Positions 12,393-57,668 of a stretch of DNA of 64,000 bases are shown piece by piece; the first letter of the stretch is position 1, and the number at the start of each line of letters is the position of its first letter. The DNA comes from Podarcis erhardii (Eukaryota). The stretch lies in NCBI GenBank assembly GCA_964252035.1, contig OZ176207.1. One strand, written 5' to 3'. The notes beneath the pieces are model-generated. The model was not told the DNA's origin, searched no databases, and saw only the letters and a list, made by a program, of their open reading frames with translations. The translations under genes and the position numbers were made by a program.

Positions 12393-13074
12393 TACCTTTT
12401 CTAATTTGCTGTTAATTTCCTCCACTGTTCTTGCAGTCAGCAGACAGTGGTCTGCGAGTATTTCTGCATAGATAGTAGTTCATGGGATAGTTCATGGGCA
12501 CTCGTCTCAGCATTCTCCCCTGGATGATCTCCACCCATTAAAGCATCCCCACCTACCTGGGAATGTGCTCTGTTGGATGTGGTAGGTTCTGAATTCTGTC
12601 CTTTTATTAAATCATCCAGTTTACTCTGCTTGCACTTCTGCTGTGGGCTCACTTGTGGAGATGAGACCAGTCACTTCTTTTTCCTAGTCATTTTCCTGGA
12701 GATGCAGCCACTACTAATTTCTGCTGTAAATTGGAAAGCTCGGTGTCCTCCCAAAATAGAGCAATTAATCGCCACTCCTGCTGATAATTAGTTGGTAGAC
12801 TGAGTCGAGCTGGAGCTAATTAAGGCTTTCCCCGAGACTTTCCAGGACTTTCTCTAAGACTTTTAACTTGAGCTTTTAACTCAAGCTTTGTGAATATATT
12901 AGTTAAGGAAAAGCTGCCAAATGTTGTAGATAAAATACCGGGGCTGATAAAAACTGAATAAAAACTGATAAAACCTAATAAAAACCGCACAGCTGATGCA
13001 GAGCTCAAGTCAAACTAATAAAAACTGCACAAGTGATGCGGAGCTCAAGTTGATGCTTCCACTAATGACGGTTC

Positions 13075-15419: not shown

Positions 15420-16085
15420 GTGAGTGTAACAACATAGAGAGGTAAGGGTCTGTTTGTGCGTGCAGGTGTGTATTCTGTGTCCTGCTGTGTTAGAGGCGTC
15501 ACAGTTTCCACAATGACAATGGGGTTCCTATGCAAACAAAGCAAGGCTAGGTCTGTGCTCGACTTGTGTAGTTCAACACCACTTTCAAGATGTTTCTGAA
15601 ACATTTCAGGACATTTCAGAAGAGGAGGCGGTTGGGTATCCAGTTCTCAAGTGGCTTTTGGTTGCTTTTTGGACAAGTTCCACAAACACGACAACTGCAC
15701 TCTGATGCTGCTGTTGCCCAGAAACAGATATTCAGATATTAGGGCCGAACACAGCCATTATGGCTAGTAGCCATTGATAGCTTTAGAATTTGCTATAATT
15801 CTTAATGGATAGTTCTAAGAATTTGCCTAATTCCATTTTAAAGCCACCCAAATTGGTGTCCACAGCTACATCGTTTAGTGAATTCCATATTTTGACTAGG
15901 CACTGTGTGAAGAAATATGCCTTTTTGCCTTGAATATTCCAACATTCATCTTCATTGCATTACCTCCTGTTCTGGTATTATGAGAGAAGAAGAAAAGCTT
16001 CTCCACAGAATGCATCTTTTTATATTCCTCTATCATGACCACCCTTACTTGTTTTTTTTTCTAAACTAAAAACACCTCAAACATT

Positions 16086-16226
16086 CGTGTGCATGCACAC
16101 TTCTTCAGATACATGCACACGAAAGCTCATACCTAGAACTAACTCAGTTGGTCTTTAAGGTGCTACTGGAAGGAATTTTTTTATTTTGTTTTGACCATGG
16201 CAGACCAACACGGCTACCTATCTGTA
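16086..16226 (+). mobile_element. Short Penelope-like element with inverted 5' segment, in RRM2B intron 2
   Basis: Near-identical to 53183-53281; 16084-16112 is the reverse complement of the element's 5' end. 12-bp TSD ACCTCAAACATT at 16074-16085 and 16227-16238. Confidence 0.85.
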
Positions 16227-17483
16227 ACCTCAAACATTGTATAGGCTTTTTTCGTAGGGGAGTTCCTCTAGCCACTTAAGCGTTTTGGTTGGTATAGGAG
16301 AATAAAAAGAAAGGAAGGGTCAAGAGACCTAGGAAAGCCAGACTTTAGGGACAGCTAGGAGAGAGGGTGACGAAAGACTGACTCCATTCACTGATGTCAC
16401 AACCACACCATACATTTAAGGCACTCTTGTACCACTTTAAAAGTCATGGCTTCCCCCAGAGAATTCTGGGAGCTGTAGCTTGTAAAGGGTGCTGAAAGTT
16501 GTAGATACATAACTAACACTTGCCCCAAAGAGGCTCACGTGGTGCTGTCATTGTCAGCTGTTTGGCACCAGGCAAAGACATTTGTCTTCTCCCAGGCATT
16601 TGAACACTGATATGGGCCACTGATAATGTGCTGTTTTAGGTAGTCTTTCTGGAAGCAGCTGGTTCATCTTTGTGTCTGACTTGTTGAGTGTGGATGAACT
16701 TTAAGCATATTAATAAAAGAATTATGTGGCACCTTAAACTCTTAATACATTTATTACAGCACAAGCTTTTGTGGATTAGAGAAAGGAGAAAATGATAAGG
16801 CGGTAACTGAATGGCAATAAGATACAAAAATTGCAGTCAGTGACACTGAGATGTTAGATAGATACACCTGTAAAATTTTACCAGAATAGATTGATGATAA
16901 CTCCTGAAATGATTGTATTTACACCTGCAGTGGGGCAGGGAACAGTTAACAAGAAATGATCATAGATAGCGCAGATATCCTGGCATATTTAGTGTACTGT
17001 TTCTTAAATTAATTCATTTTAAATTGTATTGGTTTCATGTTTATTATTTGTTATTTCTGTTAGCCATTTTGCGACTTTTGGAGGAGTGGTGATAATAACA
17101 AAATTAATAACATGTCTTTGAATAAGTTATGGGCATCCTCTTTCCCTGTCCACTTGCAAACTATCCAGTCCTTGCAAATGTCTTCAAATGAAGCACAAGG
17201 CATCGTGGAGAGAAGCTTTGTAGGAACTATATGAATGTGGCGGGTTGGTAGATATTGGTTTGTTTTGGTTTTGTTGCTCTTGTTCTTTTGTATTTTGTGT
17301 TCTTATCTTGTATCTTTGTGTTGTGAGCTGCCTTGAGATCTACAGATGAAAAAACAGTATAGAAAATTAATAAATAAAGAATTTGCCATTTCATTTCCCT
17401 CAAGAGTTTCTTTTGTCTTACAGAGTTATTAATGAACCACTAAAATATAAATTTGCAATGAATTTTTCTTCTTCCTCACAAAG

Positions 17484-48974: not shown

Positions 48975-49435
48975 GAAGAAAGGCATCTGTGAGCCTTCAA
49001 ATTTATATAGAAAGTGAAAAGATCTGGAGTCTTTATCTGTAGAATTTTTTTTCCTGCAGAATGATTGTGCAGTTTTTATTCATCTGTTGTGGGGATTCAG
49101 ATTCCCTCCTCACCTCAAGGCAGAGTTTTAGCTGTGGAGATTTAGGATGATAGCCAACTAAATCATGCTCAAAGGAGACCCACTGAAATAAATGGACTTG
49201 TGTATGACTAATATGACTAAGATTGGACACTAATCATCACTTAAACCACTGTAATGTGTTGCCCAGGGTGAATGATTTCTATCCAGACATCGTATCATTC
49301 ATGACAAAGAGTGCTGTCTAGCATTGGCAGTCCTGATGCACATTATTGCCCCAGCAGGGAATTTGTTCTTGATGACTTATGAGAGTCTTCCCATCTCTAT
49401 GGTTTCAGACTTAGTGCTTCAAAACCATTTTTGCC

Positions 49436-51615
49436 TGGAACTGGCGGAAATGACTGGCAGAATCCGAGACCAGGGAGATGAGTCGGTGGGAGAAGATTGG
49501 AAAAAAATTAAAGATTATTTACAGAAATATTGTAAAATTATTATTTTTTATAATAATTTTTATTAATTTTCATAAACAAAAAACACACAAAAAAAACATT
49601 CACAAACAACACATGACTTCCCCATACCTCCCCTTCACTGCACCCTTGTTTCCAATTTTTTAGCAATCCTTCATTCCATTTCTATATTTAACTTCCCTCA
49701 GGTTCTCTTAACTTAAACATTTACAGCTATAATTCTCTGTTTCTTACCCCTTGACATTTTATCAGTCTGAAATTTTACAGCAGTTCTTAAGATATATTTT
49801 AAATTTTTTCCAGTCCTCTTCCACTGTCTCTCTCCTCTGATCACGGATTCTGCCGGTCATCTCTGCCAGTCCCATAAATTCAGTCACCTTCGTCTGCCAT
49901 TCTTCCAGAGTAGGTAATTCTTGCATCTTCCAATACTTTGCCAAGAGAATTCTTGCTGCTGTAGTTGCATACATGAAAAAAGTCCTATCTTTTTTTGGTA
50001 CCAATTGGCCGACCATACCCAAGAGAAAAGCCTCCGGTTTCTTTGCAAATGTCCACTTAAGGATTTTCTTAATTTCATTATAGATCATTTCCCAGTAGGC
50101 CTTAATCTTTGGGCAGGTCCACCAAAGGTGGTAGAAAGTTCCTTCACATTCGTTACATTTCCAGCATTTGTTATTGGGCAAATGATATATCTTTGCAAGC
50201 TTGACTGGGGTCATGTACCACCTATAGATCATTTTCATTATGTTTTCTTTCAAGGCACTACATGCCGTAAATTTAAGGCCTGTGGTCCATAACTGTTCCC
50301 AGTCAGCAAACATAATATCATGACCTAAGTCTTGTGCCCATTTGATCATAGCTGATTTGACCGTTTCATCCTGTGTGTTCCATTTCAGCAACAAGTTATA
50401 CATTTTAGACAAATTCTTAGTATTGGTCTCTAACAGTTCTGTTTCCAATTTTGACCTCTCCTTCTGAAATCCTAGTTTCCTGTCCTGCTTAAAAGTCTCA
50501 TTTATCTGATAATAGTGTAACCAGTCTCGAACTTTGGATTTTAGTTTCTCAAAGCTCTGTAATTTAACTTTTTCACCGTCATATTCTATAATTTCACAAT
50601 ATTTTGGCCAATTAGAATCCATATTAAGTTTTTTCACCGCTCTAGCTTCCATTGGTGACAACCATCTGGGAGTTTTACTTTCCAACAAATCCTTATATCG
50701 ATTCCAAACATTATACAAAGCTTTCCTGACAATATGATTTTTAAAGCCTTTATAAACCTTTGCCTTGTCATACCATAGATATGCATGCCAGCCAAAATTA
50801 TTATCATACCCTTCCAAGTCTAAAATGTCTGTATCTTCAAGAAGTAGCCATTGCTTCAACCAGCAGAAAGCTGCTGCTTCGTAGTAAAGTCTTAAGTCCG
50901 GCAGAGCAACCCCCCCCCCTATCTTTTGCATCAGTTAAAATCTTAAATTTTATTCTGGGCTTTTTGCCCTGCCAGACAAATTTGGATATATCTTTCTGCC
51001 ACTTCTTGAAACAGTCCATCCTATCTAGAACTTGCAATGTCTGAAACAAAAACAACAATCTCGGCAATACATTCATCTTGATAACAGCAATTCGGCCTAA
51101 CAAGGATAGTCTCAACCTAGACCATATGTCAAGATCTTTCTTAACTTCCGACCAACATTTTTAGATTATTTAAAGATTATTTACAGAAATATTGTAAAAT
51201 TAATGAGCTTTAGAAAAATGGTGGAATGAAGTTATATGGCTTTGGCAGAAATGTTATAAGGAATTAGGTACAGATAGATTGTTAATGGGGAAAAAAAAAA
51301 GGTTAGAACATGTTAAGATTAATTACAGGACAGAAAATAGAGGAAGATGGAAAGGAATTGCTGAAATAGTTAATTGAAGTGGAATACAAAAAGGGAGGCG
51401 TGAGGAAGTCAATGAAACAAGTGTATGAAAGTTAAGATTGAAAATATTGGAAGTGTTTTTAATTGTTTTTGTTTTGTTTTGTTAATTCAATGTTTTATGT
51501 CGTGTTTTTTGTTTTTGTTTTTGTATTGTATTATATTGATTTGTTTAATGCTTTCTTTTTCTTATTCTGTAATTTCTAAACTCTTAATAAATATTATTTA
51601 AAAAAACAAAAAAAC
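49436..51615 (+). mobile_element. Outer 5'-truncated L1-like element (pieces 49436-49540 and 51203-51615), split by a nested L1
   Basis: ORF2 end LELAEMTGRIRDQGDESVGEDWKKIKDYLQKYCK|INEL*, then 3' UTR, AATAAA and A tail. 15-bp TSD AAAACCATTTTTGCC at 49421-49435 and 51616-51630. Confidence 0.88.
49541..51169 (-). mobile_element. Inner L1-clade LINE, ORF2 post-RT region with CCHC knuckle
   Basis: ORFs LSLLGRIAVIKMNVLPRLLFLFQ... and 49762-50931 (CWKCNECEGTFYHLWWTC) joined by a frameshift in the C10 run at 50910-50919. Flanked by a 33-bp duplication. Confidence 0.92.
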
Positions 51616-51887
51616 AAAACCATTTTTGCCATAAACGCATTGCAGTTGGGACCATTGCAGACCTGATGCTTTCAGAAGTTTCAGTTCGTAACTGTAGTCT
51701 CATTAGTGTTGTGGAGCATGTCAGGATGTCTATTTTTGGCTAACATTCCTATAAAAATGTAAAATGCTTTTCCCAGCATGTGCTCTTAAGAGCTGTGGAT
51801 CTTGCTGAGCTCTAGACAAAATAGACTGGAAAGTTCCTCCTCCTCTAATTGTTTTAGATGATTACATAATGTTGTGGCTGTTTTAAC

Positions 51888-52240: not shown

Positions 52241-53181
52241 GTAGAAATAAGGCAACCTGAACAATTTGTATACTGCTTAATTACCGTATACAGCGTACCG
52301 TAGAAGCAAGGCAATAAGACTAAAATTGCAGCAAATTTCACTGGAAAAGGTAACAGAAAGAAAAACTCTGCAGCTAGAATAATGGTGGCCATAATGGTAG
52401 GGAAAAGCCTACATAATAATCAAATTTGACAGTTAACATCTCATTCTAATACTTCTTCCTTGGGAGGTTCTAATGTATTTATGAATAAAAACTCCCGTGT
52501 TTAAAGGAAGCTACGCAAATGTCCTGCCAGTGGTTTATCCTCTGCTATATTTTACTCTGGAGGAGTTGCAGTTAATTGACTACTTTTTCATGACACACGT
52601 GCTGCTAGTTGGTTCACAGGCAATCTTTGTTTGTACAATTTTGACTTGTCACAGGATTGGGACCAAACAAGTCACCCAAGTCAGGAACTAGGCATTGTCA
52701 TAGGTTAGCAACCAAGAGGTTTGTTCTGAGGACAAACAGAAAACAAAACTAAATAAAATTGGGGCAGGGTGATGGAAAGCCAAGGACCTAGTTCTCAAAC
52801 ACAGCAGGTGATGTTGTAAGTTTGTGTCTCTACAGGTGGGGGAACATATGAATGAATGTTTCTCCATGGAGAATTCCCGCCCCCCGCCCCTGCGCATATA
52901 AAATAGGTGGCAGAGGGAAAAGCTCTAGCCCAGGAGTAGGCAAAATCCGGGCTTATGAGCTCTATTTTCTTTTTACTAGATCCCCCATATCCATTAACCT
53001 CATCGTCTTAGAGTGGATCCCTGTGTGGATGAGCCAAGAGACAAGCAAATCCTGACATGACAAGCCAATAAATTGAAGCACCATTTGAAAGGTACTGTAC
53101 TAGAAGATACATCCAGAAGAGGTGGGTGATGCTTATTCTAAAAAACTCTTTGTTGTGGAAGCCCAGAGTCACAGGTATTTT

Positions 53182-53221
53182 GGTATCTGAAGAAGTGTGC
53201 ATGCACACGAAAGCTCATACC
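53182..53221 (+). ncRNA. Minimal type I hammerhead ribozyme motif
   Basis: Stem I GGTAT/ATACC, CTGAAGA box 53187-53193, stem II GTGTGC-AT-GCACAC, GAAA 53209-53212, palindromic AGCT in place of stem III, cleavage triplet CUC ending 53216. Confidence 0.8.
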
Positions 53222-53281
53222 TAGAACTAACTTAGTTGGTCTTTAAGGTGCTACTGGAAGGAATTTTTTTATTTTGTTTTG
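53183..53281 (+). mobile_element. 99-bp Penelope-like element (pseudo-LTR fragment)
   Basis: GTATCTGAAGAAGTGTGCATGCACACGAAAGCTCATACC...GGTCTTTAAGGTGCTACTGG; 10-bp TSD AGGTATTTTG at 53173-53182 and 53282-53291. Confidence 0.85.
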
Positions 53282-53302
53282 AGGTATTTTGAGGGTTAGT
53301 CT

Positions 53303-53805: not shown

Positions 53806-55014
53806 AAACCTGATCTCATTTTTTGACAGAATTACAAGCCTGGTAGATGAAGGGAACGCAGTGGATGTAGCCTACCTTGATTTCAGCAAGGCATTTGACA
53901 AGGTGCCCCATGATATTCTTGTAAAGAAGTTGGTAAAATGTGGACTTGACTATGCTACCACTCAGTGGATTTGTAACTGGCTGACTGACCGAACCCAAAG
54001 GGTGCTCATCAATGGTTCCTCTTCATCCTGGAGAAGAGTGACTAGTGGGGTGCCACAGGGTTCTGTCTTGGGCCCGGTCTTATTCAACATCTTTATCAAC
54101 GACTTGGATGATGGACTCAAGGGCATCCTGATCAAATTTGCAGATGACACCAAACTGGGAGGGGTGGCTAACACCCCAGAGGACAGGATCAAACTTCAAA
54201 ACGACCTTGACAGATTAGAGAACTGGGCCAAAACAAACAAGATGAATTTTAACAGGGAGAAATGTAAAGTATTGCACTTGGGCAAAAAAAATGAGAGGCA
54301 CAGATACAAGATGGCTTGAGAGCAGTACATGTGAAAAGGATCTAGGAGTCTTGGTTGACCACAAACTTGACATGAGCCAACAGTGTGACGCGGCAGCTAA
54401 AAAAGCCAATGCAATTCTGGGCTGCATCAATAGGAGTATAGCATCTAGATCAAGGGAAGTAATAGTGCCACTGTATTCTGCTCTGGTCAGACCTCACCTG
54501 GAGTACTGTGTCCAGTTCTGGGCATCACAGTTCAAGAAGGACACTGACAAACTGGAACGTGTCCAGAGGAGGGCAACCAAAATGGTCAAAGGCCTGGAAA
54601 CGATGCCTTATGAGGAACGGCTAAGGGAGCTGGGCATGTTTAGCCTGGAGAAGAGGAGGTTAAGGGGTGATATGATAGCCATGTTCAAATATATAAAAGG
54701 ATGTCACATAGAGGAGGGAGAAAGGTTGTTTTCTGCTGCTCCAGAGAAGCGGACACGGAGCAATGGATCCAAATTACAAGAAAGAAGATTCCACCTAAAC
54801 ATTAGGAAGAACTTCCTGACAGTAAGAGCTGTTCGACAGTGGAATTTGCTGCCAAGGAGTGTGGTGGAGTCTCCTTCTTTGGAGGTCTTTAAGCAGAGGC
54901 TTGACAACCATATGTCAGGAGTGCTCTGATGGTGTTTCTTGCTTGGCAGGGGGTTGGACTCGATGGCCCTTGTGGTCTCTTCCAACTCTATGATTCTATG
55001 ATTCTATGATTCTA
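53806..55014 (+). mobile_element. 5'-truncated CR1 LINE (RT domain to 3' tail)
   Basis: RT motifs YLDFSKAFDKV, GVPQGSVLGP and FADDT; frameshift at about 54311-54314; stop 54927-54929; 3' UTR ends (CTATGATT)3. Confidence 0.96.
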
Positions 55015-57607: not shown

Positions 57608-57668
57608 GCAAACAAACAAACCAACAAACCAACAAACCAACCAACCAACAAACAAACAAACCCAACAA
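57608..57668. repeat. (AAAC/AACC)n compound microsatellite
   Basis: Directly visible tetranucleotide repeats. Confidence 0.9.

What the first reader, a model, noticed from the sequence alone, without database searches (positions are those of the whole stretch)
53173..53291. Intact minimal hammerhead ribozyme carried by a 99-bp Penelope-like mini-insertion
All catalytic elements can be read: stem I GGUAU (53182-53186) / AUACC (53217-53221); CUGAAGA (53187-53193); one extra A; a 6-bp stem II GUGUGC/GCACAC; GAAA (53209-53212); a palindromic AGCU replacing stem III; and a CUC cleavage triplet (cut after 53216). This is the minimal type I architecture known from Penelope-like elements, which is thought to cleave as a dimer through the palindrome. 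The unit has a perfect 10-bp TSD, so this ribozyme-bearing fragment was itself retrotransposed; the outermost stem I base comes from the TSD. With a second near-identical copy at 16086, this points to a recently active family of very short ribozyme-containing retroelements in this lizard.
Basis: partly seen in the sequence, partly recalled or inferred. Interest (0 to 1): 0.75.

Follow-up and report, generated by a model that had tools for sequence, protein, structure and literature searches.

The report
Penelope-type hammerhead in 99-bp mini-insertion
A 99-base, recently inserted scrap of a Penelope-like retrotransposon carries a complete minimal hammerhead ribozyme motif; this is real but ordinary, because the motif and this kind of insertion are already described for these elements, lizards included.

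Summary
Window 53183-53281 is a 99-bp insert flanked by a perfect 10-bp duplication. 53182-53221 carries every hammerhead core element at the stated coordinates. It is the only such motif in the window, and none appeared in 300 random windows.

The architecture matches the published minimal hammerhead of metazoan Penelope-like elements (PLEs): short helix I, an extra base after A9, a long helix II starting G-C, and palindromic AGCU in place of helix III. It also parallels the tested Anolis Poseidon ribozyme.

The "family of very short ribozyme retroelements" reading is not supported.
- The copy at 16086 is 115/116 identical in the shared part.
- Its first 27 nt are inverted, so it has no intact ribozyme.
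- It carries a 33-34-nt 3' extension, the known optional PLE "tail".
- Duplications of different length at the two sites (10 and 12 bp), the optional tail, the 5' inversion and the lack of poly(A) are all PLE hallmarks.

Most likely both copies are dead-end run-off or 5'-truncated products of a larger active PLE. Both span the cut site, so their template RNAs were uncleaved.

As a lone monomer the motif is probably inert: predicted helix I probability is 0.07, and published monomers do not cleave.

This scan has noted the same element family many times elsewhere in this genome. No family census or read evidence could be obtained. Interest is low.

The parts
53173..53182 (+). Left copy of the 10-bp target-site duplication AGGTATTTTG. 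Its last base, G53182, supplies the outermost helix I pair.
53183..53281 (+). 99-bp PLE-derived insert, unit positions 1-99. It has no tail, no poly(A) and no ORF.
53182..53221 (+). Minimal type I hammerhead motif: helix I 53182-86/53217-21; C3-A9 53187-93; extra A 53194; helix II 53195-99/53204-08 with loop CAUG; G12-A15.1 53209-12; palindrome AGCU 53212-15; C17 53216. The predicted cut is between 53216 and 53217.
   Evidence: architecture compared
53282..53291 (+). Right copy of the 10-bp target-site duplication.
16074..16085 (+). Left copy of the 12-bp target-site duplication ACCTCAAACATT of the second insertion.
16086..16112 (-). Inverted 5' segment of the second insertion, the reverse complement of unit positions 1-27. 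It ends at the same unit position 1 as the 53k copy. It separates the CUGAAGA box from the GAAA box.
16113..16193 (+). Direct part of the second insertion, unit positions 19-99. It starts at the apex of helix II. There is one substitution relative to the 53k copy (16145 C vs 53233 T).
16194..16226 (+). 33-34-nt 3' extension (tail) that the 53k copy lacks. It is AC-rich and contains ACCATGG (ATG 16197-16199), which stays open to the end of the insert.
   Evidence: tail concept
16227..16238 (+). Right copy of the 12-bp target-site duplication.

Best explanation
The 99-bp unit is the terminal module of a young Penelope-like retrotransposon, running from just in front of its hammerhead to its proximal reverse-transcription start site.

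Inferred mechanism: the element's RT/GIY-YIG protein nicked an AT-rich target. It started cDNA synthesis at an internal site of the element RNA, without homology to the target. It copied only as far as a point 4 nt upstream of the CUGANGA box, which is either the RNA 5' end or an extreme truncation point. The insertion left a 10-bp duplication.

The copy at 16086 comes from the same family. There, reverse transcription started at the distal site, which adds the 33-34-nt tail. Priming from both nicked strands (or a snap-back) inverted the first 27 nt.

The hammerhead is a passenger of this module. In the parent element it is the conserved minimal ribozyme of the pLTR, which is thought to act as a dimer or with the element's protein. 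In this solitary copy, which brings no promoter sequence of its own, it is most likely inert. Both insertions contain sequence on both sides of the cut site, so their template RNAs had not been cleaved.

Shown here: motif, TSDs, copy relations, the two 3' ends, the inversion. Inferred: PLE parentage, the priming steps, inactivity.
For: - Motif and TSD are exact. It is the only hit in the window and there were 0 hits in 300 random windows.
- The architecture equals the published metazoan PLE min-HHR consensus: helix I 4-5 bp, an unpaired nt between positions 9 and 10.1, G10.1-C11.1, a long helix II, and a palindrome at helix III. That consensus was reported in reptiles too.
- The layout is the same as the experimentally tested Anolis Poseidon_Ac ribozyme, read from its consensus. 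That one has CUGAGGA, an extra U, a 6-bp helix II, GAAA, palindromic ACGU and C17. Helices I and II and the palindrome differ from ours in a compensatory way.
- The 3' ends of the two copies differ by 33-34 nt. This matches the optional 30-40-bp PLE tail that lies between two internal RT start sites.
- The 5' inverted segment, heavy 5' truncation, TSDs of different length at the two sites (10 and 12 bp) and absence of poly(A) are PLE hallmarks.
- There is no target/RNA homology at the 3' junction beyond 1 nt (sequence), as reported for PAc.
- PAc cleaves and extends both strands, which fits the inversion.
- Predicted helix I pair probability in genomic context is 0.07, against 0.82 for helix II.
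Against: - No PLE RT/GIY-YIG ORF lies in the window, and no sequence link to one could be made. The neighbouring RT at 53861-54319 is CR1/LINE-like. The unit is not similar to Poseidon_Ac.
- Only two copies were available, so family-wide conservation and covariation are untested.
- Both copies reach exactly the same 5' base. Random 5' truncation does not predict this. It would also fit a discrete short RNA.
- No read data were obtained, so expression and cleavage are unknown.
Confidence: 0.78

Rival explanations
1. The unit is a discrete, non-autonomous, hammerhead-headed short retroelement (SINE-like or retrozyme-like, about 100-133 nt). It would have its own defined transcript, which the PLE machinery mobilises in trans. 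This is essentially the first reader's reading.
For: Both copies extend to exactly the same unit position 1, 4 nt upstream of CUGANGA. Non-autonomous PLE derivatives and non-LTR retrozymes related to pLTRs are described in vertebrates, reptiles included.
Against: - n = 2.
- There is no tandem arrangement, and the ends do not coincide with the ribozyme cut site, unlike retrozymes.
- The insert itself brings no upstream (promoter) sequence.
- For PAc the template must include uncopied sequence downstream of the RT start, so inserted mini-copies could not serve as templates again.
- A fixed 5' end is equally explained by the transcription start of the full element.
Confidence: 0.15
2. The motif is a functional host-exapted ribozyme at this locus, for example one that cleaves a host transcript it is embedded in.
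For: All core positions are intact. Intronic hammerheads exist in amniotes (background cited).
Against: - The insertion is very young: the TSD is perfect and it differs by one substitution from another copy.
- Helix III is missing in the monomer, and helix I is weak in context.
- Monomeric min-HHRs are inactive in vitro.
- No conservation data are available.
Confidence: 0.03
3. The hammerhead is a chance resemblance inside an unrelated repeat.
For: No Rfam hammerhead model scores, even at E<=10.
Against: - 0 of 300 random windows give even a relaxed match.
- Features that the descriptor did not require agree with the published PLE consensus and with the validated PAc ribozyme: the identity of the extra A, G10.1-C11.1, and C17.
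- The Rfam models expect a real helix III.
Confidence: 0.03

Closest known systems
Minimal hammerhead ribozymes (min-HHR) of metazoan Penelope-like elements (Cervera & de la Pena 2014, PMC4209133)
   Same: Type I topology; helix I of 4-5 bp; an unpaired nucleotide between A9 and G10.1; a G10.1-C11.1 pair; a longer-than-canonical helix II; helix III reduced to a palindrome (AGCU) that can pair only between two copies; widely dispersed as single motifs from truncated PLEs. Reported in reptiles.
   Different: Helix II is effectively 5 bp plus a tetraloop, at the low end of the published 6-8 bp. Here the whole helix II region is a perfect 14-nt palindrome. No link to a pLTR or ORF could be shown in this window.
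Poseidon_Ac (PAc) of Anolis carolinensis and its protein-assisted hammerhead (Frangieh et al. 2024, PMC11167929)
   Same: Same ribozyme layout, with an extra base after A9 and a palindromic tetranucleotide before C17. Two alternative 3' ends 30-40 nt apart (the tail), arising from internal RT initiation with no homology to the target. AT-rich targets. Both strands are extended. Insertions made from uncleaved RNA.
   Different: It is a different sequence family, with no similarity to the Poseidon_Ac consensus. In PAc the ORF starts at helix II. Here the frame from the loop ATG stops after 7 codons, and a possible start (ACCATGG) lies about 100 nt downstream, in the tail.
Non-LTR retrozymes of animals (Cervera & de la Pena 2020, PMC7229834; Li et al. 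2026 bioRxiv 10.64898/2026.07.22.740005)
   Same: Short non-coding units with a type I hammerhead that are related to PLE pLTRs. They are present in reptiles, and monomeric derivatives exist.
   Different: Retrozymes are head-to-tail tandem arrays whose units are bounded by ribozyme cut sites. Here there are solitary copies with TSDs, and their ends do not coincide with the cut site.
L1 twin-priming 5' inversions
   Same: The second copy has an inverted 5' segment joined to a direct 3' segment, with a short (9-nt) overlap and microhomology.
   Different: The element class is different. PLEs are known to carry inverted 5' copies as a regular feature.

Membership tests
Hammerhead ribozyme (catalytic core) | C3-U4-G5-A6-N7-G8-A9 box | tested here: met
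   CUGAAGA at 53187-53193
Hammerhead ribozyme (catalytic core) | G12-A13-A14, then an A15.1-U16.1 pair and a non-G at position 17 | tested here: met
   GAAA 53209-53212, U53215, C53216
Hammerhead ribozyme (catalytic core) | Three helices around the core, including a stable helix III in the monomer | tested here: not met
   Helix III is one A-U pair closing 2 nt and is not predicted to form. Helix I pair probability is 0.07 in genomic context. No Rfam hammerhead model hits at E<=10.
Hammerhead ribozyme (catalytic core) | Self-cleavage after position 17, giving 2',3'-cyclic phosphate and 5'-OH ends | not testable with these tools
No bench assay was possible.
PLE minimal hammerhead (min-HHR) | Short helix I (4-5 bp), an unpaired nt between positions 9 and 10.1, G10.1-C11.1, a long helix II | tested here: met
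   Helix I is 4 bp from the element plus 1 from the TSD; A53194 is the unpaired nt; G53195-C53208 is the closing pair; helix II has 5 bp that can form out of 6 complementary positions. Compared.
PLE minimal hammerhead (min-HHR) | Palindromic positions at helix III, allowing a dimer | tested here: met
   AGCU at 53212-53215
PLE minimal hammerhead (min-HHR) | Consensus family with covariation across copies | tested here: inconclusive
   Only one intact copy is in the window, and no relatives could be fetched. The only comparison is with the PAc ribozyme read, which differs in a compensatory way in helices I and II and in the palindrome.
Penelope-like element insertion | Encodes, or is linked to, an RT plus GIY-YIG ORF flanked by pLTRs | tested here: inconclusive
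   No PLE ORF lies in the window. The nearby RVT_1 ORF is CR1/LINE-like. The parent element was not seen.
Penelope-like element insertion | Optional 30-40-bp tail at one end (two RT start sites) | tested here: met
   The copies end at unit position 99/100 and at 133/134, a 33-34-nt difference. Definition.
Penelope-like element insertion | Heavy 5' truncation, an adjacent inverted 5' copy, a TSD of variable length, no poly(A) | tested here: met
   Inserts of 99 and 141 bp; inverted 27 nt at 16086-16112; TSDs of 10 and 12 bp; the 3' ends are not A-rich. Definition.
Non-LTR retrozyme | Head-to-tail tandem units bounded by hammerhead cut sites | tested here: not met
   There is no tandem array at either locus. 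The insert ends lie 34 nt upstream and 65-99 nt downstream of the cut site.

The most novel reading that the evidence does not exclude
Both insertions stop at exactly the same base, 4 nt upstream of the CUGANGA box, and both span the cut site. This leaves open that this lizard makes a discrete, hammerhead-headed RNA of about 100-133 nt that the PLE machinery repeatedly retrotransposes. That would be a SINE-like or retrozyme-like parasite of the PLE, with the ribozyme kept at the extreme 5' end for a role other than self-cleavage.
Probability: 0.15. Interest if true: 0.5.

Novelty: already known. Interest (0 to 1): 0.2.

Why it matters
The finding adds little on its own. It is a clean, young example of two published features of Penelope-like elements: the minimal dimer-type hammerhead, and the two alternative internal reverse-transcription start sites (the tail).

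Its modest value is as in-genome support, in a second lizard PLE family, for two in vitro results from Anolis Poseidon. Reverse transcription starts internally without target homology, and uncleaved RNA is the template. A genome-wide census of the fixed 5' end could tell whether it marks the pLTR transcription start or a separate short mobile RNA.

Tried and rejected
- Rfam at gathering threshold on the whole window, and at E<=10 on both loci: no hammerhead family hit. There was only weak noise, snoU85 and miRNA-like hairpins caused by the inverted repeat at 16086-16121.
- A metagenome-contig scan with a degenerate 21-mer of the unit gave 33 loci. None is related to the unit by blastn, so they are chance matches.
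- Viral contigs and genome-contig scans with family-specific patterns gave 0 hits.
- Full-text search for five 16-18-mers of the unit found no paper. The supplements of the 2014 paper are not held.
There is therefore no evidence on expression, RNA ends or copy number.
- The bacterial-type promoter/terminator scan is uninformative for this genome.
- Is the neighbouring RT ORF the parent PLE? Rejected: it is CR1/LINE-like.
- Is the unit Poseidon_Ac? Rejected: there is no sequence similarity, only the same ribozyme layout.
- RNAcofold favours a dimer through the 14-nt helix II palindrome (about -37 to -40 kcal/mol) over the AGCU contact. I make no functional claim from this.

Full report
**Observation.**
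- AGGTATTTTG occurs at 53173-53182 and again at 53282-53291. It brackets a 99-bp insert, 53183-53281.
- Hammerhead parts: GGUAU (53182-86), CUGAAGA (53187-93), one extra A (53194), GUGUGC-AU-GCACAC (53195-53208), GAAA (53209-12), AGCU (53212-15), C17 (53216) and AUACC (53217-21).
- G53182 belongs to the duplication, so the element itself contributes 4 bp of helix I.
- I wrote a descriptor for the minimal hammerhead: helix I >=4 bp, CUGANGA, 0-1 extra base, helix II >=4 bp, GAAA, palindromic helix III, UH. It finds only this site on both strands of the 64-kb window. It found nothing in 300 first-order Markov randomisations.
- The simpler pattern CTGANGA-N6-30-GAAAGCT also occurs once only.
- One correction: the sixth helix II pair would leave a 2-nt loop. 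ViennaRNA gives 5 bp plus a CAUG tetraloop.
- Rfam hammerhead models do not score here even at E<=10. These models expect a real helix III.

**The second copy.** The insertion at 16086-16226/7 has a perfect 12-bp duplication, ACCTCAAACATT, at 16074-85 and 16227-38.
- Its direct part equals unit positions 18/19-99 with one substitution (16145 C vs 53233 T).
- It then continues for 33-34 nt that the 53k copy lacks (16194-16226).
- Its first 27 nt (16086-16112) are the exact reverse complement of unit positions 1-27.
- The CUGAAGA box is therefore on the opposite strand from the GAAA box, and neither strand has an intact ribozyme.
- The inverted piece ends at the same unit position 1 as the 53k insert. 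The direct piece begins at the apex of helix II.
- blastn found no further copies in the window.

**What it is.** The published description of hammerheads in PLEs (Cervera & de la Pena 2014) reports all of the following:
- a helix I of 4-5 bp;
- a larger helix II;
- a conserved G10.1-C11.1 pair;
- palindromic positions in place of helix III, so that only a dimer can form it;
- wide dispersal as single motifs from truncated PLEs, in reptiles too.

Every one of these is met here.

The Poseidon_Ac consensus printed in the supplement of Frangieh et al. 2024 has the same layout across its tandem junction: CUGAGGA, an extra U, a 6-bp helix II, GAAA, ACGU, C17, and a 3-bp helix I. Helices I and II and the palindrome (CG vs GC) differ from ours in a compensatory way. 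Otherwise the two units are not alike in sequence, so this is another PLE family.

The insertion anatomy also fits PLEs. Craig et al. 2021 list a high degree of 5' truncation, an inverted 5'-truncated copy adjacent at the 5' end, a 30-40-bp tail often present at one end only, and a target duplication of variable length. Frangieh et al. showed for the anole element that:
- the tail is the stretch between two internal reverse-transcription start sites;
- initiation needs no homology to the nicked target;
- the enzyme cleaves and extends both strands at AT-rich sites;
- the template RNA must reach beyond the copied part.

The 33-34-nt difference between our two 3' ends matches this picture. So do the 1-nt-only junction homology, the AT-rich targets and the inversion.

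**How it most likely works.**

Shown here: a 99-bp and a 141-bp product of the same young family, each with its own TSD, with alternative 3' ends and one 5' inversion.

Inferred:
- Both are run-off or extremely 5'-truncated products of a longer, active PLE. They were primed at the proximal site (53k) or the distal site (16k).
- By analogy with PAc they are dead on arrival, because they lack the downstream RNA needed for protein binding and bring no upstream promoter sequence of their own.
- Both inserts span the cut site, so their template RNAs were uncleaved. [quoted passage not shown]

As a lone transcript the motif is unlikely to cut.
- Helix III is missing.
- In 111 nt of genomic context, helix I has pair probability 0.07, against 0.82 for helix II.
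- Monomeric min-HHRs gave no cleavage in vitro.
- The anole ribozyme cut only with the element's protein present.

**Rival.** Both copies reach the same 5' base, which random truncation does not predict. This fits two readings: the transcription start of the pLTR, or a discrete hammerhead-headed short RNA mobilised in trans. I could not test this, so it stays a lead. I give the separate-element reading 0.15.

**What could not be done.**
- Scans of metagenome, viral and prokaryote genome collections returned no relatives.
- No paper prints the unit's sequence.
- No PLE ORF lies in the window. The RT fragment 570 bp downstream is CR1/LINE-like.

**Verdict.** The motif is real, correctly read and not due to chance. 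It is an ordinary instance of an already published kind. This scan has noted the same element family many times elsewhere in this genome: 153 notes mention hammerhead and Penelope. The idea of a family of very short ribozyme retroelements is not supported by the two copies here. Interest 0.2.

Noticed in passing
window 53861-54319 (+), continuing in broken frames to about 55000: A reverse-transcriptase ORF fragment (Pfam RVT_1, E 5.5e-25). Its best solved relatives are R2 and LINE-1 ORF2p, and it carries an FADDTKL motif. It is a CR1/LINE-like element fragment, unrelated to the Penelope-type insert 570 bp upstream.
   Followed up: partly
window 16197-16226 (+): The tail of the second copy contains ACCATGG, a strong Kozak-like context, and its frame stays open for 10 codons to the end of the insert. 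It may be the start of the parent element's ORF, which would place the proximal RT start site just upstream of the start codon. This is a lead only.
   Followed up: no
window 53195-53208 and 16087-16100: Helix II is a perfect 14-nt DNA/RNA palindrome (GTGTGCATGCACAC). RNAcofold prefers an intermolecular helix II duplex (about -37 to -40 kcal/mol) over two monomers. In the 16k copy the direct segment starts exactly at the centre of this palindrome.
   Followed up: partly
window 49421-51630: Another first-stage note on this window reports a nested L1-in-L1 insertion with a 33-bp TSD. A 389-aa ORF at 49762-50931 (-) gave no Pfam hit at E<=0.01.
   Followed up: no
window 12975-13050 and 57609-57668: Two short tandem repeats: a 40-bp unit x1.9, and (CAAACCAA) x7.4. 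Nothing further was examined.
   Followed up: no
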